A stretch of 64,000 nucleotides of DNA. Source: Laetmonice hystrix. Taxonomy: Eukaryota. Below the pieces are notes generated by a model. The model worked only from the letters and a program-made list of their open reading frames with translations. It had not been told where the DNA came from and searched no databases. The translations under genes and the position numbers were made by a program. The stretch covers positions 11,718,001-11,782,000 of the forward strand of contig OZ249445.1 in NCBI GenBank assembly GCA_965235115.1, in the 5' to 3' direction. Within the stretch, counting starts at the first letter, position 1. The number at the start of each line of letters is the position of its first letter. Positions 53,601 through 64,000 of the stretch are shown one piece after another.

Positions 53601-56600
53601 TCGTGTTTCATGTTGCCACCAATCTCCACCACAGGCTTACCGTTTGATACTCATCAGGACGGAGACCCCCATCGGATTATACATATCTCTTTACAACCTC
53701 TAAGCCATCTTAAATGCTATATAGTGTTCACGTCGTGCAGAGTTTGCTAGTCGGGGACGTCAATGGGGTTGGATGCATACCCGTTACAAGGTCATGGCTG
53801 ATGACTCTGCCCCAAAGGAATATAAATTGCTCTCCTACACCCCGGTGTGTACGAGGTGTTCAACTCTAGCTCTCCCCATCAGCTGTTTCACACGTCCCTC
53901 ACGCCCACAACTTACACCTATATACCCAAATGTATAGCAGAAACGGCCAAACGTTACGCACAGGTGCTGCTGACCCTTTGATGACGATACATATATGGGT
54001 CCTGTGGGACACGAGACAGGAGTTTGGTGGTGGTATGCCCCTTTATTGTCTGTCAACCTTCATTCCCCTAAATTACCCTTTATACGGAGTTAAACCTTCG
54101 CGCTAGTGTCTTTAAGCAGTTACAGTGTATTTCTATTCCAATGATCTGTCTTTTGAAGTTAAGGACATCGGGACCGTAGCAGATGCCCCGAATAGGGCTG
54201 AAAAGCAGGGACACACAAAGGCTGGGGGATTTAGCCGAACCCGTGCAGCTGCGGTGTCGACCGGTGGGCAAATTACGGCTGACACATGACGGAGCTTTTT
54301 CTCTGTCCGTGCGAGGCACGAAACAATGGATGCCAGCTCAGACGGGGTTAAGACTAGCCAGTCCATCACTCTCTTGTTCCCAAACCTCTGGCTTTATTTA
54401 CATCCACACCGAGATATATACATCAAACCCCATCCCCAAGCTATTTAGCCAGTCATGTTCGGCTGTCCACTTTTTTTCTGCCCATCCGTGGCTCATACTC
54501 GGTGGTCCATTCAGTATGGAATCACCTGCCGGATAAATAACTTTCAAATTGTATAAAGTAGAGCTGAGATAACGTGCTTGTTTGTACGCATCGACTTTGA
54601 CGTAACCATGTGATTGGGACTCACGGTTACGACCATTGTGTCCTTGACTGTCCCTTTCTGGGTAATTGGGTACGTAATTAACTTGGACTCCACTGGTCAA
54701 TGATAGATAGTCTATATCTAAAGAACTTAAACGGGCTTTTACCTGAAATAATCTACGTTTATAGAAACCCTCTGAGAGGTTCTCGACCAGGTTAAGCCAC
54801 ACTGTGCGTATACGCTCAAACATACGTTTGTGCCTACGTATAGGTGTGTACATAAGTATATATTTAGAATATACATTGGTATTCATGTTTGTATGTATTA
54901 TGTAGGCATATGTATCATACTGAGGGTTATAATACACCTCGATTATATTATAACGGTTAGGCTATGCACTCATAATACACAAGACGTATATATGGTAAAA
55001 CGAACAGGAAATATACACCTGTGCTTGGGAAGTATCAACTAAAGAAATCTGTTTTGAAACAACAGAGGGTTAGAATGTAATTGGGGTCAAAGCATAAAAT
55101 GAGGCAATCTATCTTAGGACATTGGTCAAACACATCTGAAAAGCGTGTAATTAAACGGAATAACAATAACTGTGTATAATATGCTAAACTTCCAGCCAAA
55201 TAAGTTTTGATTATAGTGGGAGACGACACATGCTCCCAGTGTGAATCCAATTATTGAGAAAGCTTCAAATCAAATAGGGTTCCAACCGGGTTGACCTAAA
55301 ACAACTACTTGAAACATTTGGTTCGAAAGAAGCGAACGGTTCCTCTTCAGTCGAGATGTGTTTGCGGTCAATGCAAAGGGAACTTCGCCTTTGTCCGCCC
55401 CACTTCCCAAACTGGCTTTCTGGTTCGGTTGAGAGGTGCTCTAGGTTGGGCTGAGAGGTAGGGTTTATAAATGTATGTCGGCGACATCACTTGTCACTTA
55501 TAGGTAGGCTTTCAGGGTCGTTCTCAGAGTGAGTTTGTGCTTTCTTATAGAGCACGTTTACAAAACACCTTGAAAGTTTAGTGCAGGCGGCGTTCACACG
55601 TCCGATATATAACGTGTAAGGGGGTCAGTTTGCACGACTGTCGTTTATACGGTGTACGGTTACACGACCGTCTGCCTGCATGATTATAAAGACACGGGTC
55701 ATCATTAAGGGTAGTTTTTCAGGTGCTGAAAGATCCTAAATGACAACAGCTCTCATCACTTCTGGCCTCCCCTTTATCACGCCATCCTTCCCGCAGTGCT
55801 TAGCACAATATAAACAGTTAAAAGCGAATTTGTAACCCGCATTGGCGTCATTGACCGCAGTGGCAAATCTAATGCGGTTTAAATGACGATTTATCATGGT
55901 GGCCGAAGCGCTGGTCATCTCGAGGTAGAGAAAGCACCAATGTGCTTTAAACGCTAACGTCGTTGGCCTATAGACTTGGAGACAATATCAGCTGAAGTGA
56001 AATGAGGAAATAAACGCACGCTGTGATTGCATATTCAAGTCTCTCCATTAGCCAAGAAAAAATACGCCATTTACTGGAATTCCTATCCCCGCCTCCACGC
56101 ATAGCTGTGTACTGTATGTGTATGGGCTTTGCTCTATGGCCTGCTTGGTTTGCGAATGGAGAACCTATATATAAAACTTCCTTATACCAGCTAAGGCCAT
56201 CTATAGCTTTCCGTTCTGGGGACCTACATTGAAAATTCTAACCGTCAGTGGCCGGTGTGAGTACTGCATTGTAAGCCCATTACGTGAACACCGATTTATT
56301 CTGTTTACATTCGTCTCAACGCGCTCTTGACGGCCGCTTAACTTACAATCACCAGCTCAAGGTGAACAGGACTCTCAACAAGCACGGCCACTAGTACCTG
56401 TAATACAGTCATTCTGATGAAAAACACAAACCGGTAAGCAAAGAGTGTGGCTTGTCGTCGACTCTGGCTGTATGTATTTAGGCTTGTTAAGCGGCCGACA
56501 ATGCAAACAGAAAACACCCGACAAGAAGCAGAACAGCAGCGCTGCTCGAGGCAATTGCGTTACTGACCGGCAGCCAAGTACAACAGCGCGGAAGCAGCGC

Positions 56601-57799
56601 TGGCGAGTAGGATGGTTGGAGACAATGATAGCAGCAGCATTGTCTCAGCATCTCTGGTCGGTGGATGAGGAGGAGAGTGGCTGACGGACTAAGACGCCCT
56701 CTGGAGATCGGCGTGACGATTAACCGTCCGATCGATATCCCAAGCCCGTCACACGGCGCTGGCTGCGGCGGGGGCTGGGGCCGGGGCCTGCCGAGCGGTA
56801 CGGTAGTTGGTTACGCATACACCTCCCCAGCCTCCGAGCCGTCCACACCCCCGCCTCGTCCGCTCCGTCTATCTATACAGGACATCCACAGCACCAGTAA
56901 AACCCACGGCCACATCCTCCAAACCACACCATATCATTGTTAACTATTACATGCCTCAAGGCAAATGCTTTGCAAAGTTTACACATTCCCGGTTTTTCTG
57001 AAGACAAAGACGCTTCTGTGAAGGGATTCAGTGTCTTCTTCATCTGTATAACGTTGCAAAAAATCCTCTTGTATCATTCTTGTTTTCTGGATGGGCAACA
57101 AGAACTGCACACCTAAGCAATTAAACTATACATGTACTAGTATAGACTACATCTATGGTTCTGCTAGAGGCCAATAGTATAAGACTAGCTGTCCGACCTC
57201 GTGGCCATGCATGCGTAGTGAGGCCCCCTGTAAAGACCGATGAATGAGCACTGTTTCGTGGATCACATTTGCATACGCTACTGGGTGTGAATATTTAAAT
57301 TAGCGGCCTGGGCCTTAAAGCAACGCGGTGAGCGGTCGTTTACGACATTTGCCGATGTTGGCGGGCAAGCGCACGCCCAGTGTGAGGAGGGCCGTGACTG
57401 GTCGGTGAATCGAGAAGAGGCCGTACGTCATAGGACGGTCCAAGTGTTACTCCAGCAGACCGTGCCAGCCACTAGCAGGGCCGCGGGGTAAGCCTTGCTA
57501 TAGTAGACACACATCCACTGGATGTGACGTGAACCCCACTTCGTCCACAGTATCATATCGTTGGCCGGCACCTCACCTCACTGGAGAAGGTTTAACATCC
57601 ACTTTTAGGTCTCAGTGCACAAATTCGGCCAACGCTTACGCTTGGACTCACTGGATAAATACAATAGTACGGCGACGATGTTGGCATTGAAAGGCTGAGG
57701 TCGAGCGTAAGTAAAATGGCCTTTCACGCATCTTGCTATGTCACCGACAGCCATCCCCTTCTTCCCACCTGGACCTGAACGGTGAAGGTACTTGCTTAC

Positions 57800-57965
57800 C
57801 CGGCGGCTGCTGAGCCCGGTTCCCGGCAGACGGTCCACCTAACCCGGGCAGGCACTACGGCCCGGGCGGCTGGACTTAGTGGCTCCGGGAAGCAGGAGTC
57901 AGGGGCTGGCGGGCCGGTCGGCCGCGCTCTCTCCCGGGCACCCCGAGCGGAGGGGTTCAAGTCAA
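57800..57965. promoter_or_regulatory. GC/CpG-rich island ~1.3 kb upstream of the candidate exon (possible promoter)
   Basis: Abrupt GC-rich block; a minus-strand donor-like CGG|GTAAGC at its left edge. Confidence 0.3.
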
Positions 57966-59214
57966 TTGGTCGTAAAGGAAGCTTAGAACGATTCAATCCA
58001 GGGACGACAGTACTGTGTTGCAATTAGGTATCAGTGTCCTTCTAGCTAAAGGAAATTCCACTGTGTTGCCCCGATGGGCCAGCCAAGGGCTGCTCTTTTT
58101 ACAGACAGCAACGAAAGGAGACCATCATACTATTCTTCCAGTACAGTGATTAAGAAATGTTTCTGGATGGACTGGCAAATCACACTGATCGACCCACTTA
58201 GGATTATTTTGTCTTGTAATGGGGTATAAACACTAGCCAGATAAGGTAACGTAGACTTACATTGTATGACAAGGGATGTGACATATCACCCATAGATTTA
58301 ACATACCACACTTGTATTAGACATTTCTGTAAACATAGTCAAGCATTGATGGTGTTTATCATTTTTAATTTACTTTTAGAAAGGCAACCGAAATTATTAT
58401 ATGAGACTTTATATAGAATATAGAGTATATAGAATTTAAGTCACCAATACTGACCCACATTTAAAATATACCTGAGCGAAAGACTCCACTTAATTCCACT
58501 TTCAGTATATCTTAAGATCATGGATGGGTCACTGCACACGATGCACTCATTCAAATTATAAAATGTTGAAGGTGATCCAAGTTTAGTACTGAGAGACAGA
58601 ATATGTTTACATTATCGAGACGGATCATCAATGATGGCGCCAGCAGTCTGATATATAGACATGCAGTTCCATATTTGGGTATTGATTTATCAAACACCTA
58701 CAGTGCATAACTGTATCATACATATGCACATATATGGTATGATGATGGGTGTGATCTAGAGATAACATCACATAAGTACAATATAAGTGTATTTATCTCA
58801 GTGGACGGGCCTATACACAAACCATTCCAAGTTTACATGCCCTTGGACTATAATACAGTGGCACTTGGTCCCAAGATGACACCTGTACATCCCTGAACAC
58901 GCTGGGATGTTACCACGTCGTTTGGTGGTCCGGGTATAGATGTATATGATCTATAACAACCCAAGTATACGAAAAGATGACACTGTCGTATCTATAATTT
59001 GTATGGCATACCAAATGGAAAACGATCCGTCAGAGCGCAGGGTGTAGGAGCACACCTAGGCCTACATACGATAGTATAAATATCGACTTATGCCTCATCA
59101 TCCGTGGTTCCATCCAACCTCTGTCACTTAGACCTCACTTTGACGACCTTTCAGTGAGTGTGATCACCACAACACCAAGCAAGCCTCAACTCGGCTTCTT
59201 TTATTTGATTACAG

Positions 59215-59488
59215 GTCCGAAACGAGAGTTATAACCAGTGAACATTCAATCGACGAGACTGAGAGAGAAACGTGTGCATCCAGACAGAGAGAGAGAGAGA
59301 AAGAGTAGCGAGAGGGACTCATTCCCCGGCTAAATAGTGGAAAGTCTAGAAGGACTCGTGATAATATATCACGTTGAACTTTCTTTTGGAGTTGTCCCAC
59401 CCAACCGTCAAAATTCAGCCCACGGTGGAGAGTCATTCTAATTCCACCTCTACCCCCTCTTCTGATTCCTCCGTCATGCCCGCTAAAG
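59215..59488 (+). other. Candidate 274-nt exon (5' UTR plus start codon)
   Basis: Acceptor cttcttttatttgattacAG|GTCCGA (AG at 59213-59214) and donor AAG|GTAAGT (GT at 59489). The interior is ATG-free until 59476 and contains a (GA)n tract. Confidence 0.55.
59476..59488 (+). CDS. Pax6: Short first coding segment (MPAK + 1 nt) ending at a phase-1 donor; tentatively the N-terminal M-P-x-K exon of a Pax6-type gene. Downstream coding exons lie outside the window.
   Basis: Sequence reads tccgtcATG CCC GCT AAA G|GTAAGT: G at -3, a perfect consensus donor, an in-frame upstream TAA at 59362-59364, and no ATG between 59161 and 59475. The architecture matches my recollection of zebrafish Pax6a (MPQK-E) and the end of human PAX6 exon 2 (ATGCCTCATAAAG|gt). 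The symbol rests on this motif alone; I found no paired-box exon in 59489-64000. Confidence 0.5.
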
Positions 59489-62400
59489 GTAAGTCCATTG
59501 CGTTTTTCTTCTGAAGGTTATAGGTTTTTTAAATAATTTGAAAGTAGTTTGGAGAGGTAGACGGGGTGGTGGGGTGCATGGGTGAATGCTGGGCCTGTTA
59601 CAGGCATGAGGCCGTTAGGCCTGCTGCGTTTGTTTTCAGTGAAACATTTGTTTTAGCACAACTACTTAGTACTTAGTGATCATGTATTATGTACAGTGTA
59701 CATAGATTAAAGCATGGGAGAGAGAGACAATCGTAGTGAAGGAGTCAATGATAGTGGAGAGAGGTTTTTAATGACAGCCCAGGCAGACAATGCGGTCCGG
59801 GGAAGGTGTGAGGCCGTGCGGTGTACGCCGCGGCAGGCACCGACCGTTAGAGCCGAGCCCGGCTAACCGCTGCTCCCCGCTAGGACCGGCCATATAAACG
59901 AACCGCCTGATCCTCGTCTCAATAGCCGCCCTCGTGGACCGATTGGACCCTCTTTGTAGCGGCTGTTGGCTGCAGCAGTTGCCATAATGGCAGATTTGCC
60001 GAGATTAGCGAACTACTATGGCGATCAAAGCCGCGGGTCGAGCCCCACTCGCCCCAACCCCCTTATAACCCTACGCTGACTTACGCACCGCAAAAATCCA
60101 TCCCTACTGGACCTCATTTTTTATTTCCATCCTCGTCTGCTGATCTTGACAAATGAAATACTCTGTCATCCGTCGAAAGCCAGAGGGATTCCCCGCCATC
60201 TTACCATGTGGCAAACTAATTATTAAATCAGACGCCATTTTAATTTGATTTTACCGCAGAGTAATACATACTAATTAATTTCGGCGGGAAGCATGGAGAG
60301 CATGGGCGTTGTGTTTGTTTGAGGTCAGGGGTTGGACGGCTGCAATATTAGAATCTGTCAGAGGCCTCGCCACTTGCCGGGATTACACACGAAATACGAC
60401 CGGCTGCATATTGGCCACTCGGGGGTCATGGCTTTCTCCAAATCTCCCTCTGAAAATTCACCCTGAAATATGTCCTGACCACCCTGGATGCTACTCTAAC
60501 TTAGAACGGGGCGCCGTTTAGATCATCTCAACGACTGTCTACGAGAATTAATTTCTGGCTTCTATATTTATGGGGCCGGTTAAGAAACGGTCCCGTCTGG
60601 GCAACTGAGGCTATAAGCTAAGCCCATTGCCGTGCCCGCTTAGCGGGAGGCCTCCATTTGACCTAGTGAATGTGTCGTGGACCATGGGGCTGTAGTACTG
60701 ACTGACTGACTGACCGAGCGGTCGGTCGGTCGGCCGGCTGACTGGCCGACTGTCGGCAGGCTCTCCCCGCCCCCAGTCGTGATCATCGCCTCGTTTGTGA
60801 ATCTCGGTCACAAAATACACCCTCAATCAACGAGCCGATTGACAAGATGGTAATCAGGACAGATAGAGAAATCGATGGTTGAAACTCGCCGTGCAGCCAA
60901 ATGATTTAAATTCTATCATTTATGGAATGCAGAAATAGCTGATCAATTTGACCCAGCAGTGGTAGGGTTGTGTGGGGCAGGAAGCAATGTTCGCTCTGAC
61001 TTGTCTCGGCATGTAACGTGAGGACGGTTGGATTTAGAGAGTATCATCTTGTTAGGGTTTCCTTATTGACGGCTGCGGTCGGAGCTGGCCGTGGACGGGG
61101 GGGAGCACGTATTAGGAGGGCGGGCTCGGGGGCGGACGGGGTCCGTTACGGAGCTTGCTGTGAGGTTCGCTGGCCTTTCGACCGATACGACCGCCGCTCG
61201 CATACATGTATCGGCCTTCACCAGCCCGCCCCCGCCGCCCGCTGAATATTGTCCCGTGTCAGCCGGGATTTCCCCAGTGCTCGTTCGAACCGGGACCTCT
61301 CACCTTCCATACTGGAGAAGTCGGGAAAGCAATCTACAAGTGTTGTCAGCGAATTGAGAAATGATGCGCAGATAAGGACTGCCAGCGATCTATTGCGGCC
61401 GGGGCCGAGCCCATCATCGCCCGGGCCGATAGTGATCACGAGCCGGTCACCGATCCGTCGAGCGCCGGCCCCAGAGCTGGGGCCCTTCCCGAGACGGACG
61501 CGTGGCACGACCTCACCCGCCCCGGGATGGCCGATCAGTCTTTATCCACCATGATCGAGGAAATTGTCTCCGTCGCTGTCCGCTTGTCGACAGCCAATCT
61601 GCGACTCGGCGCTCGTGCAGCATAAAATGAAGGCTGTCGGTGAATCTGAAATCAGCTTGACCGAGCTGTCATTCTCCTGTCTCCACTGATTCCCATGGCA
61701 TGCACACTCCTAACCTTAAGACCCTGGCCGGGAGACGGAACTTCTCCTGTTCACAATCATACATTTTAATTTCTGTCCACCCCACGTCTGGGGTAATTAT
61801 CCCTAAATCCGCACGTTAGCCATGGGCAGCACGGGAGGGCAGGCTCGACACTCACTAGCTAAGCTCGAGTAAGAGCCGCCTCCAACTCTGGCCTATACAG
61901 GAGTCCCCCTCTGGCTTCATTAAGGCAGTAAACAAAAGCCAGGATTTTTAACTACGCCCCTATTAGCTCTGATTGGCCGACAAATGAGGAAGCTATTTAT
62001 TTAGGTTATATTTCAATCAGACTGTGCCAGCATTGAGTGGAGTGGGAGCGCCACCATTGCCCTCGTCAGCCAACGGGAACTACCAAGCAATTGCCTACAC
62101 GTGGGTCTCAGCAGCGTTGATTCCCCAGGCATCATTGAAAGCCAATAGGGCAGTGACGCCGACAACTGATTATCTCTCGCCACCAACTTTCATGGAGAGG
62201 AAGCGTCATCATTGGCACTAAGCCTATCTGATTTAATGTTTTCCTTTAATTTGGAATTGGGTAACATCCAGGAAGGAAGACGGATTTAGTCCTCATTTCC
62301 ATTCTTGTAAAAACTATTGAGCAACTGTTTTTGATAGTGGTTGAGGTGTTGAAGGATATGTTACTTTGAATTCATGGGATTACTCTCAATAATGCAGAGA

Positions 62401-64000
62401 TATACATGGTTTCACATGAGAAGCAGAGTCTTACAAGCAGAAGTCAGATTTTACTTTGATGCATGCTTCCTTGAGTCTCCCACAAGACTGCACCACAGAC
62501 ATATAATTGCTGTGAATTGTAAACATATACATGAGACATGACTCTACATAGCCCTGATAGGTTCACGTACAGACGTAAACATGACCAATAAAAAGGGCTC
62601 ACCTTCCTGTCATAATAAAAGAGGCTCAGGAAGTGCTGCTCCCTGGAGCACGCCGATATACAACACATATACGGTTTGTGCCACGAGGTAATCAATAAAG
62701 CCCTGCGTTCTGATTACAAGGGGGCTCCTTACACACTTCACCACTTAGCTGGATCAAGGAAAACACCACAGAACCACCTATAACACTCCACCCCCTCACT
62801 GTGTCTCCTCTATATACCTTCTCCTATAGATTACATGCGCTAATCATAACTCGATCCCTTTGATTAACTTTCAGAGCATAGTTCAGAGGAAGATCCCAAG
62901 AAAAATAGACCAAAGAGAGGTAAGGACCATATGTTTTCCTTTTGGTTCATGTTTGAATGCTATAGGGAAAACATGTGGACGGCCGTACCTTTCGGGAGTA
63001 TTACAACGTATACCATCTTCAGTCTCTAAAATATTTATAAATATTTTTCATCATCCTCTTTTATACAAGTCAAAACATTGAGAGAAATTATAATCCTCAA
63101 GGAGGACATCCTGGATGCTAATATTCTAATCTCTGTTCGGTTCAGTAGATTGCCTTGACGTATGTATATACCCCGAATGCAGCCACCCACTCATTTATAG
63201 GTCCTATGCTATATATTTACAGTATATGGAGCCTATATTGCAACGTGTCTATTTTTCTATGGTTTTTTCCTTATGCTTGTTTATGCTTTTGCGGTGCCTC
63301 TATGCAAAGTCTTGTGTGCTTAGAGATGTATCGGTTGTGTATAGTCTAGTTGTATCTGATATCAGATATTGTGTGACACAACGTTTGAAACATACATGTC
63401 TATGTTTACAGTTATAGCCATTCATGCAAACATGTATTGTGTGGATTTTTAATCCCATATATTATGGTAGACACGGAAGTATTTGTTGCTATGGTATCAC
63501 ACGCCCCTCCGCCCTGTTAGATACATCGGTCACAAGCCTGGCGCTATCAGATTAATGCTCGACAAGCGCCAGCAACATTGTCCATTGGGCAGACAGGTTG
63601 TTTGTGGTGTAGAGGCGCCATTTGGAAACATGTGCGCTGACCCATTTCTGTCTGATTGAACACGGTTAACACAGGCAATGAGAGCAACCGGTGAGCTTTC
63701 ATGTGGTTGTAGAACATCTACGTCCCACTCTCACAATGTTACCGCGTATACTTCCCAATGTCATTGTCTCTGACTACTTCATCAACAATGTCTCTGTGTA
63801 AAAGGATCCTTCTGATAATGACGGGCTAAAACTGTTGCTCAAATAGGATGATTCATATAAGGTCATATTCCAGTTGTAGATCATTTCCCCTCGCAACTGT
63901 CAATCTATAATGTCACACAGACGCAGACATAAACACACAGACCTATTCATACACATTTAGTGATATCCATAAGCTTATAGGCCTGTATGTAAACTTCCAT

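What the first reader, a model, noticed from the sequence alone, without database searches (positions are those of the whole stretch)
59215..59494. M-P-x-K micro-coding exon with phase-1 donor: probable 5' end of a Pax6 gene
Seen: a strong acceptor, an ATG-free leader, ATGCCCGCTAAAG and a perfect GTAAGT donor. Recalled knowledge (to be verified): zebrafish Pax6a starts MPQK, human PAX6 exon 2 ends ATGCCTCATAAAG|gt, and the paired box begins after a phase-1 intron (G|HSGVNQLGG). Inference: this is the homologous exon with an unusual Ala at position 3, and it would splice to give MPAKGHSGVNQLGG. That would identify the locus although no homeobox or paired box is in the window.
Basis: partly seen in the sequence, partly recalled or inferred. 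Interest (0 to 1): 0.7.

Follow-up and report, generated by a model that had tools for sequence, protein, structure and literature searches.

The report
First coding exon of Pax6
The flagged stretch is the ordinary first protein-coding exon (start codon plus four codons) of this annelid worm's single Pax6 eye and brain control gene, built as in molluscs, other worms and a scorpion, so it is correct gene annotation and not a discovery.

Summary
An acceptor-like site lies at 59214/59215, the leader has no ATG, ATGCCCGCTAAAG ends at 59488, and GTAAGT follows.

The genome's best paired-box match lies 18.4 kb downstream on the same strand and starts in phase 1 (cag|GG CAC AGC). It is about 95% identical to the human PAX6 paired domain. 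Behind it come a linker exon, a three-exon homeobox and a C-terminus ending SQYWPRIQ. Together they give a clean 411-residue Pax6 that groups with annelid Pax6 in a tree.

Two details of the reading are wrong.
- Ala at position 3 is not unusual. MPAK starts Pax6 in gastropods and a nemertean; Owenia has MPTK, and chitons and bivalves MPSK.
- The window also holds a 45-nt phase 1-1 cassette exon (62875-62919) encoding EHSSEEDPKKNRPKR. It matches the extension exon of other lophotrochozoan Pax6 genes, so the main product is probably MPAK-EHSSEEDPKKNRPKR-GHSG.

No RNA data exist for this organism, so no splice is shown directly. The scan has no other note on this locus. Ordinary; low interest.

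The parts
59075..59082 (+). TATA-like box (TATAAATA), a candidate core promoter about 25-35 nt upstream of where the ATG-free leader begins
   Evidence: Read directly from the sequence. The last upstream ATG is at 59090 and the ATG-free stretch begins right after it. Its function is inferred and untested.
59196..59214 (+). Acceptor-like polypyrimidine tract plus AG (cttcttttatttgattacag). It may end a 61-nt leader intron starting at a GTGAGT at 59154, it may receive upstream non-coding exons, or it may be unused
   Evidence: Sequence. No RNA data exist to decide.
59215..59475 (+). 5' untranslated leader of Pax6. It is ATG-free and contains a (GA)n run at about 59285-59305
   Evidence: in-frame TAA at 59362. 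There are no haplotype differences anywhere in 58957-59731, although the 5.9 kb laid carries 30 substitutions and 5 indels.
59476..59488 (+). Start codon plus 3 codons plus 1 base: ATG CCC GCT AAA G (M-P-A-K, then the first base of a G-initial codon). The exon ends in phase 1
   Evidence: The same ATG CCN NNN AAA G|gt exon starts Pax6 in Haliotis, Owenia and Lineus and the scorpion Centruroides.
59489..59494 (+). Consensus splice donor GTAAGT
62875..62919 (+). 45-nt symmetric (phase 1-1) cassette exon: ...aactttcag|AG CAT AGT TCA GAG GAA GAT CCC AAG AAA AAT AGA CCA AAG AGA G|gtaagg, encoding (E)HSSEEDPKKNRPKR(G). An in-frame alternative acceptor at 62887 would give a 33-nt exon encoding (E)EDPKKNRPKR
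   Evidence: Found by motif search and read. It is the top hit in the 18.4-kb intron for the N-terminal extensions of Acanthochitona (E 5e-4), Liolophura (0.002), Owenia (0.008), the unnamed protein P0177 (0.012), Bugula (0.035), Lineus (0.077) and Platynereis (0.093). Exons at the equivalent position and in the same phase exist in Haliotis, Owenia and Lineus.
62920..62925 (+). Splice donor GTAAGG of the cassette exon

Best explanation
Positions 59215-59488 are the first protein-coding exon of this annelid genome's single Pax6 orthologue. The exon carries an ATG-free 5' leader, the initiator ATG in a purine -3 context, and the codons M-P-A-K. It ends one base into the next codon at a consensus donor.

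That phase-1 end can join either of two phase-1 acceptors. One belongs to a 45-nt cassette exon 3.4 kb downstream (62875-62919), which adds an acidic stretch and a basic KKNRPKR motif. The other belongs to the paired-box exon 18.4 kb downstream (C11:11795918-11796264). Because the cassette is symmetric, both routes stay in frame. They give MPAK-EHSSEEDPKKNRPKR-G-HSGVNQLGG (probably the main form, by analogy with relatives) or MPAK-G-HSGVNQLGG (the skipped form).

Six further exons supply the linker, a homeodomain split over three exons, and the PST tail ending SQYWPRIQ. The skipped form totals 411 residues.

Shown: the sequence elements, frame compatibility, Pax6 identity, and identical exon architecture in a mollusc, an annelid, a nemertean and a scorpion. 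Inferred: that the sites are used, which isoform dominates, and where transcription starts.
For: - Paired-box exon on the same strand with a phase-1 acceptor.
- Pax6-type domain: 241 bits to 6PAX against 198 bits to Pax5.
- Eight coding exons, all GT-AG, assemble without a stop into 411 residues.
- The three homeobox pieces cover PF00046 positions 2-17, 19-45 and 46-57 collinearly.
- The model is 68-78% identical to named lophotrochozoan Pax6 proteins.
- It groups with Platynereis (support 98/92) and then Owenia (90/86) in an ML tree.
- Pax6 proteins across Bilateria start M-P-x-K followed by G, D or E. All three have G-initial codons, as a phase-1 split after AAR G predicts.
- The genomic structure (micro-coding exon, phase-1 intron, phase 1-1 extension exon ending KKxRxKR G|gt, paired exon) was read directly in Haliotis, Owenia and Lineus. 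The micro-exon and paired exon were read in Centruroides.
- RefSeq predicts both forms in relatives. Haliotis has MPAKEED...KKHTRKRG|HSG and MPAKG|HSG; the oyster has ...MPSKG|HSG.
- The motif is rare: 0.01 expected per window and 16 copies per genome.
- The region is single-copy.
- The promoter, leader and micro-exon (58957-59731) and the cassette with its flanks (62806-63096) carry no haplotype differences, although the flanks are polymorphic.
Against: - There is no transcript evidence at all. The only public runs holding this DNA are genomic contigs from one sample.
- The 59214/59215 acceptor is unverified. A TATA-like box at 59075 and an ATG desert starting at 59093 fit equally well with transcription starting near 59100 and no splice there.
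- Non-coding sequence does not align with Owenia, Lineus or Haliotis, so conservation of the leader is untested.
- Support for the cassette from each single protein query is only moderate (E 5e-4 to 0.09). It is convincing mainly because all the queries hit the same spot, with correct splice sites and phase.
Confidence: 0.88

Rival explanations
1. The exon has the same coding function but is the true first exon. Transcription starts about 59097-59112, just downstream of the TATAAATA at 59075. The acceptor-like site at 59214/59215 is then either unused or only closes a 61-nt leader intron (GTGAGT at 59154 to AG at 59214), and does not receive far-upstream non-coding exons.
For: A TATA-like box at 59075-59082 is followed by an ATG-free stretch that begins at 59093, well before 59215. 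ATGs are dense (about one per 27 nt) immediately upstream, from 58500 to 59090. No haplotype variants occur in 58957-59731.
Against: The polypyrimidine tract plus AG at 59196-59214 is good. Owenia also shows an acceptor-like site about 100 nt upstream of its ATG. Vertebrate Pax6 genes use upstream non-coding exons (established knowledge; PMC3554528 describes several promoters). A 386-nt ATG gap is only the fourth longest in the window.
Confidence: 0.4
2. The exon splices only directly to the paired-box exon, giving MPAKGHSGVNQLGG, and the 45-nt segment at 62875-62919 is not an exon.
For: The direct splice is in frame. MPxKG|HSG is the only or an annotated form in Haliotis isoform X4, oyster X3, the scorpion, a crinoid, a tardigrade and an acoel.
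Against: The segment has a correct phase-1 acceptor and a GTAAGG donor. It is a multiple of three in length and has no stop. It encodes the EED...KKxRPKR motif that sits at exactly this position in Platynereis, Owenia, chitons and Lineus. Most predicted isoforms in lophotrochozoans include such an exon.
Confidence: 0.1
3. The motif is a chance match. The real Pax6 start lies elsewhere, for instance in a proximal first exon such as the candidate at C11:11792634-11792676 (MPDEGENAAKKKRR, G|GTAGGT), 3.3 kb upstream of the paired exon.
For: That candidate has an ATG, a basic run and a phase-1 donor. Lineus has an annotated alternative first coding exon 3.1 kb upstream of its paired exon.
Against: The chance expectation for the MPxK-G|GTRAG motif is about 0.01 per window. 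MPAK is the lophotrochozoan Pax6 start. The alternative exon's similarity is weak (E 0.16-0.85), and it would be an additional start, not a replacement.
Confidence: 0.03

Closest known systems
Lophotrochozoan Pax6 genes: Haliotis cracherodii/rufescens XP_046376055 and XP_046376060, Owenia fusiformis CAH1785258, Lineus longissimus XP_064634859, Platynereis dumerilii Q2WBY2
   Same: The 5' architecture was read in genomic DNA of the first three (Platynereis was compared at the protein level only). It consists of an exon ending ATG CCN NNN AAA G|gt, a phase 1-1 extension exon ending in KKxR(P)KR G|gt, then a paired exon starting in phase 1. The MPAK start is the same in gastropods and Lineus. Overall protein identity is 68-78%. 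The nearest tree neighbours are Platynereis and Owenia.
   Different: The extension here is short: 15 residues, or 11 with the alternative acceptor. It is 30-45 residues in gastropods, bivalves and Owenia, and closest in length to chiton (10) and Platynereis (12). No second cassette was found of the kind seen in chiton, scallop, Physella and Lineus, and no tandem donor as in Owenia. Platynereis has LPSVK in place of MPAK and starts further upstream.
Teleost pax6a/pax6b exon-2 start (MPQKEY...MMQNS|HSG)
   Same: The protein begins M-P-x-K followed by a G-initial codon (E), upstream of the paired domain. PMC3554528 reports that translation can start in exon 2.
   Different: In fish the extension runs on into the MQNS exon. 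PMC3554528 calls the extension teleost-specific, whereas the MPxK start seen here is spread across Bilateria.
Tetrapod and lamprey Pax6 first coding exon (exon 4, MQNS)
   Same: A first coding exon of only three or four codons lies directly before the paired domain (PMC6925180).
   Different: The peptide is different (MQNS). By my recollection, which I did not check, the codon is split in a different phase. It is probably not the same exon as the MPxK exon.
Arthropod Pax6/eyeless-type genes (Centruroides XP protein P0200 MPHKG, Hymenoptera MAHKG, Limulus and spiders MPHKD...)
   Same: The scorpion gene has ATG CCT CAT AAA G|gtaaga and a phase-1 paired exon (cag|GC CAC AGT) about 17 kb downstream.
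   Different: Position 3 is His where this gene has Ala. The scorpion isoform examined has no cassette.

Membership tests
Pax6 (Pax4/6 class) gene | Paired domain of Pax6 type | tested here: met
   PF00292 scores 233.5 bits, the best in the genome, and 225.8 bits on the exon alone. The closest solved structure is human PAX6 6PAX at 241 bits, about 95% identical, against Pax5 at 198, Pax8 at 194 and Prd at 162.
Pax6 (Pax4/6 class) gene | Complete paired-type homeodomain downstream on the same strand | tested here: met
   Three exons cover PF00046 positions 2-17, 19-45 and 46-57. They are 60-90% identical to the homeodomain exons of named Pax6 proteins.
Pax6 (Pax4/6 class) gene | Linker M(Y)DKL motif, no octapeptide, and a PST-rich C-terminus with a conserved end | tested here: met
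   The model contains SMYDKLGLLNGQ and ends GLISPGVSVPVQVPG...SQYWPRIQ. PMC5333810 names the MDKL pattern as characteristic of Pax4/6. Absence of an octapeptide was judged by eye only.
Pax6 (Pax4/6 class) gene | Orthology: groups with Pax6 of related taxa and is the only such locus | tested here: met
   The ML tree places it as sister to Platynereis (98/92) and then Owenia (90/86), inside Lophotrochozoa. The next best paired box, on C3, is Pax1/9-type; the remaining paired-box hits score lower and were not classified.
Pax6 (Pax4/6 class) gene | The gene is transcribed and spliced as modelled | not testable with these tools
   No RNA run holds this DNA. The three runs found are genomic contigs from one sample.
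MPxK micro-coding first exon of bilaterian Pax6 | ATG CCN NNN AAR G followed immediately by a GT donor (phase 1) | tested here: met
   ATG CCC GCT AAA G|GTAAGT at 59476-59494. It occurs once in the window against 0.01 expected.
MPxK micro-coding first exon of bilaterian Pax6 | Lies upstream, on the same strand, of a paired exon whose acceptor is phase 1, so that joining directly or through symmetric cassettes stays in frame | tested here: met
MPxK micro-coding first exon of bilaterian Pax6 | The same exon and intron phase occur in relatives' genomes | tested here: met
   Haliotis, Owenia and Lineus, Centruroides.

The most novel reading that the evidence does not exclude
The M-P-x-K start exon with its phase-1 split is the ancestral bilaterian Pax6 start, not a teleost peculiarity as PMC3554528 suggests. 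The exon and its phase-1 intron were read in genomic DNA of lophotrochozoans and one chelicerate only; in insects, a tardigrade, an acoel, an acanthocephalan, a crinoid, a hagfish and teleosts only the MPxK-type N-terminus of predicted proteins was seen. The conserved Pro at position 2 would be exposed after initiator-Met removal. Together with the optional KKxRPKR cassette, it could form a regulated N-terminal module, for example a signal for protein turnover or nuclear import, or an extra DNA-contacting arm in front of the paired domain, switched by exon skipping. The evolutionary half is well supported. The functional half is pure inference.
Probability: 0.15. Interest if true: 0.4.

Novelty: already known. 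Interest (0 to 1): 0.12.

Why it matters
The result fixes the 5' end and start codon of Pax6 in this annelid genome. It shows that the 59 kb of apparently gene-free DNA upstream in the window is probably Pax6 regulatory landscape. It also adds a 45-nt cassette exon that ab initio gene callers could easily miss. That helps anyone annotating this genome or designing probes, morpholinos or CRISPR guides against Pax6.

It does not change what is known about Pax6. The same exon architecture is already predicted in RefSeq for molluscs, nemerteans and chelicerates. One small comparative point follows: the MPxK start is far more widespread than the teleost-specific label in the literature implies.

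Tried and rejected
- **RNA evidence.** The look-up of sequencing runs returned no RNA run. Laying the three runs it did find showed only genomic contigs from one sample and no splice joints. The single joint listed (59584 to 60310, 21-nt sides) is a repeat artefact on short contigs.
- **Non-coding conservation.** blastn of 55000-63500 against the 5' regions of the Owenia, Lineus and Haliotis Pax6 loci gave only chance-level matches. A closer relative's Logan contig (L025, paired exon 89% identical at the nucleotide level) is only 1.7 kb long and aligns no further than about 20 nt into the introns. The contig of P0004 could not be fetched.
- **Fragment alignment as a query.** Aligning separate exon translations to a full-length scaffold, to build a full-length search query, misaligned badly and was dropped.
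- **Second cassette exon.** A search for something like Owenia GEDAY, chiton ECSTSHSYQTEF or scallop VLRLEEEEN found nothing convincing in the intron.
- **CpG-island signal.** There is none at either candidate promoter. CpG observed/expected is about 0.85 across the whole region.
- **Literature.** 'MPHK' with Pax6 found nothing relevant. No paper read here describes the lophotrochozoan N-terminal cassette.
- **Second MPAK motif.** A second MPAK-G|GTAAG motif at C1:28405616 is 7 Mb from the nearest paired box and was treated as chance.
- **Human exon-2 string.**
Full report
**Observation.** One search shows the elements as described.
- The acceptor-like site reads ...cttcttttatttgattacag|GTCCG at 59214/59215.
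- A leader without any ATG follows.
- ATG CCC GCT AAA G occupies 59476-59488.
- GTAAGT occupies 59489-59494.

It runs from 59093 to 59475; the 386-nt gap between the ATGs at 59090 and 59476 is the fourth longest of 1101 such gaps in the window. ATGs are dense just upstream. An in-frame TAA at 59362 closes the frame upstream of the ATG. The motif ATGCCNNNNAARGGTRAG occurs once in the window against 0.01 expected and 16 times in the 627-Mb genome. The window is G000:C11:11718001-11782000, and the stretch is single-copy.

A search of the whole genome with the Pfam paired-box model puts the best hit (233.5 bits, full length, one exon) at C11:11795917-11796288 on the + strand. That is 18.4 kb downstream of the donor and 13.9 kb beyond the window's end.

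The acceptor is ...cttgtccacag|GG CAC AGC GGG GTG AAC, which is phase 1. The G left over at 59488 therefore completes GGG, and the junction reads MPAK-G-HSGVNQLGG. The exon ends ...NIPS|gtgagt. Its 115 residues score 241 bits against human PAX6 (6PAX, about 95% identical), against 198 for Pax5, 194 for Pax8 and 162 for Prd.

**Rest of the gene.** I fetched 80 kb downstream and found the remaining exons by motif search and tblastn with Pax6 proteins.

| Exon | C11 coordinates | Content |
|---|---|---|
| Linker | 11808409-11808655 | VSSINRVLRNL...MYDKLGLLNGQ |
| Homeobox 1 | 11818123-11818266 | first part of the homeodomain |
| Homeobox 2 | 11819519-11819601 | middle part |
| Homeobox 3 | 11820785-11820957 | last part, start of PST tail |
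| PST | 11821183-11821286 | PST-rich region |
| Last | 11823978-11824102 | ends SQYWPRIQ-stop |

All junctions are GT-AG, and the eight coding exons assemble in frame into 411 residues. The three homeobox pieces match PF00046 positions 2-17, 19-45 and 46-57. The model is 68-78% identical to named lophotrochozoan Pax6 proteins. In an ML tree it is sister to Platynereis (98/92) and then Owenia (90/86). This agrees with earlier notes of this scan that call the genome probably annelid. The second-best paired box, on C3, is Pax1/9-type.

**What relatives show about the N-terminus.** A library-wide phmmer search with the paired exon and a word search seeded with a whelk Pax6 fragment gave many named Pax6 proteins. 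Their N-termini fall into groups:
- MPHKG|HSG: scorpion, mites, tardigrade, acoel, acanthocephalan, crinoid, hagfish.
- MAHKG|HSG: Hymenoptera.
- MPQKE...: teleosts.
- Lophotrochozoa: MPAK (Haliotis, Lottia, Gigantopelta, Physella, Babylonia, Pomacea, Littorina, Lineus), MPSK (chitons, bivalves, Antalis), MPTK (Owenia), MPVK/MPIK (bryozoans).

So Ala at position 3 is the common spiralian state and not an oddity. The residue after K is always G, D or E. All three have G-initial codons, as a conserved phase-1 split after AAR G predicts.

In most lophotrochozoan proteins MPxK is followed by an acidic or Ser-rich stretch ending KKxR(P)KR-G before HSG. Predicted isoforms that skip it exist: Haliotis X4 is MPAKG|HSG and oyster X3 is ...MPSKG|HSG.

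**The cassette exon in the window.** A motif search of the 18.4-kb intron found KKNRPKR once, at 62898. The DNA reads ...ttgattaactttcag|AG CAT AGT TCA GAG GAA GAT CCC AAG AAA AAT AGA CCA AAG AGA G|gtaagg.

This is a 45-nt exon at 62875-62919, phase 1 at both ends, encoding (E)HSSEEDPKKNRPKR(G). In tblastn searches of the intron with the N-terminal extensions of eleven relatives, this spot is the top hit for seven:

| Query | E-value |
|---|---|
| Acanthochitona | 5e-4 |
| Liolophura | 0.002 |
| Owenia | 0.008 |
| P0177 (unnamed) | 0.012 |
| Bugula | 0.035 |
| Lineus | 0.077 |
| Platynereis | 0.093 |

An in-frame alternative acceptor at 62887 would give MPAK-EEDPKKNRPKR-G.

**Genomic structure in relatives.** I read the Pax6 loci of four species.
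- Haliotis (L022): ATG CCT GCG AAA G|gtttgt. The extension exon is ...ctccag|AA GAA GAC...AAA CGA G|gtaaga, 3.4 kb downstream. The paired exon is tag|GC CAC AGT.
- Owenia (L023): ATG CCA ACA AAA G|gtattc. The extension exon has two donors 15 nt apart, which explains its GEDAY variant. The paired exon is tag|GA CAC.
- Lineus (L024): ATG CCA GCC AAA G|gtaggt. It has an extension exon, two further cassettes, and an alternative first coding exon 3.1 kb upstream of the paired exon.
- Centruroides (L026): ATG CCT CAT AAA G|gtaaga, with the paired exon cag|GC CAC AGT.

The architecture in this window is the same.

**How it most likely works.** The exon supplies the leader, the start codon and four residues. 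Its phase-1 donor joins the 45-nt cassette or skips it to reach the paired exon, and both routes are in frame. By analogy with relatives the cassette-containing form is probably the major one. Neither form can be shown, because the only public runs with this DNA are genomic contigs from one sample.

Those contigs add one small point. The laid 5.9 kb carries 30 substitutions and 5 indels between haplotypes. None falls in 58957-59731 (promoter, leader, micro-exon) or in 62806-63096 (cassette and flanks). By my arithmetic the chance of a 775-nt gap is about 0.01.

**Where transcription starts is open.** A TATAAATA at 59075-59082, the last upstream ATG at 59090, and the ATG desert beginning right after it suggest a start near 59100. 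The acceptor-like site at 59214/59215 could then be unused. It could close a 61-nt intron from a GTGAGT at 59154. CpG content gives no help, and non-coding DNA does not align with the three distant relatives.

[quoted passage not shown] PMC6925180 notes that lamprey and mammalian first coding exons hold only a few codons. PMC5333810 and PMC3942700 describe Pax6 isoforms in lophotrochozoans. In the passages I searched or read, none discusses this N-terminal cassette.

**Verdict.** The claims of an unusual Ala and of an obligate direct splice are corrected. The feature is ordinary and already predicted in relatives' annotations, so interest is low.

Noticed in passing
L017:634-676 (C11:11792634-11792676, 3.3 kb upstream of the paired exon, outside the window): This is a candidate alternative first coding exon. 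It reads ATG CCA GAC GAA GGT GAG AAT GCC GCC AAA AAG AAG CGA AGG G|gtaggt, giving MPDEGENAAKKKRR-G-HSG in frame. An earlier phase-1 donor after MPDE (G|gtgaga) is also present. Similarity to relatives' extensions is weak (E 0.16-0.85). Lineus has an annotated alternative first exon at a similar distance.
   Followed up: partly
G000:C30:1559723-1563132 (L009, L013): About 20 head-to-tail partial paired-box matches (PF00292 positions about 22-62) sit at roughly 170-180 nt spacing on the minus strand, some with stop codons, next to fuller PAX exons. This looks like a tandem amplification of one paired-box segment.
   Followed up: no
window 59090-59131: The last ATG before the leader opens ATG CCT CAT CAT CCG ... 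TAG (MPHH..., 13 codons), 15 nt after the start of the TATA-like box. It echoes the MPH start of other Pax6 genes but has no Lys-Gly and no donor. It is probably chance, or an upstream ORF if transcription starts further upstream.
   Followed up: partly
window 1-59000: There is no convincing protein-coding ORF on either strand in the 59 kb upstream of the Pax6 start. The longest ORFs are low-complexity or look non-coding by eye. This looks like the gene desert expected around a developmental regulator.
   Followed up: partly
window 58957-59731 and 62806-63096: These stretches are free of haplotype differences, in a 5.9-kb region that otherwise carries 30 substitutions and 5 indels between the assembly and contigs of the same sample.
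   Followed up: partly
G000:C1:28405616-28405633 (+): A second exact ATG CCT GCG AAA G|GTAAG (MPAK plus a phase-1 donor) occurs elsewhere in the genome, 7 Mb from the nearest paired-box hit. I treated it as chance.
   Followed up: no
L023:10231-10280 (Owenia Pax6 locus): The Owenia isoforms with and without GEDAY come from two donors 15 nt apart on the extension exon (AGA G|gtgagg... and ...TAT G|gtgaga), not from a separate cassette.
   Followed up: yes
G000:C3:21743801-21744169 (-) (L003): The second-best paired box in the genome lies in a 404-codon open frame and is Pax1/9-type (YGEVNQLGGVFVNGRPLP...). The paired domain and a long C-terminal region sit in one exon.
   Followed up: partly
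window 59272-59311: A (GA)n-rich run lies inside the Pax6 leader. The reads tool skipped it as a repeat.
   Followed up: no
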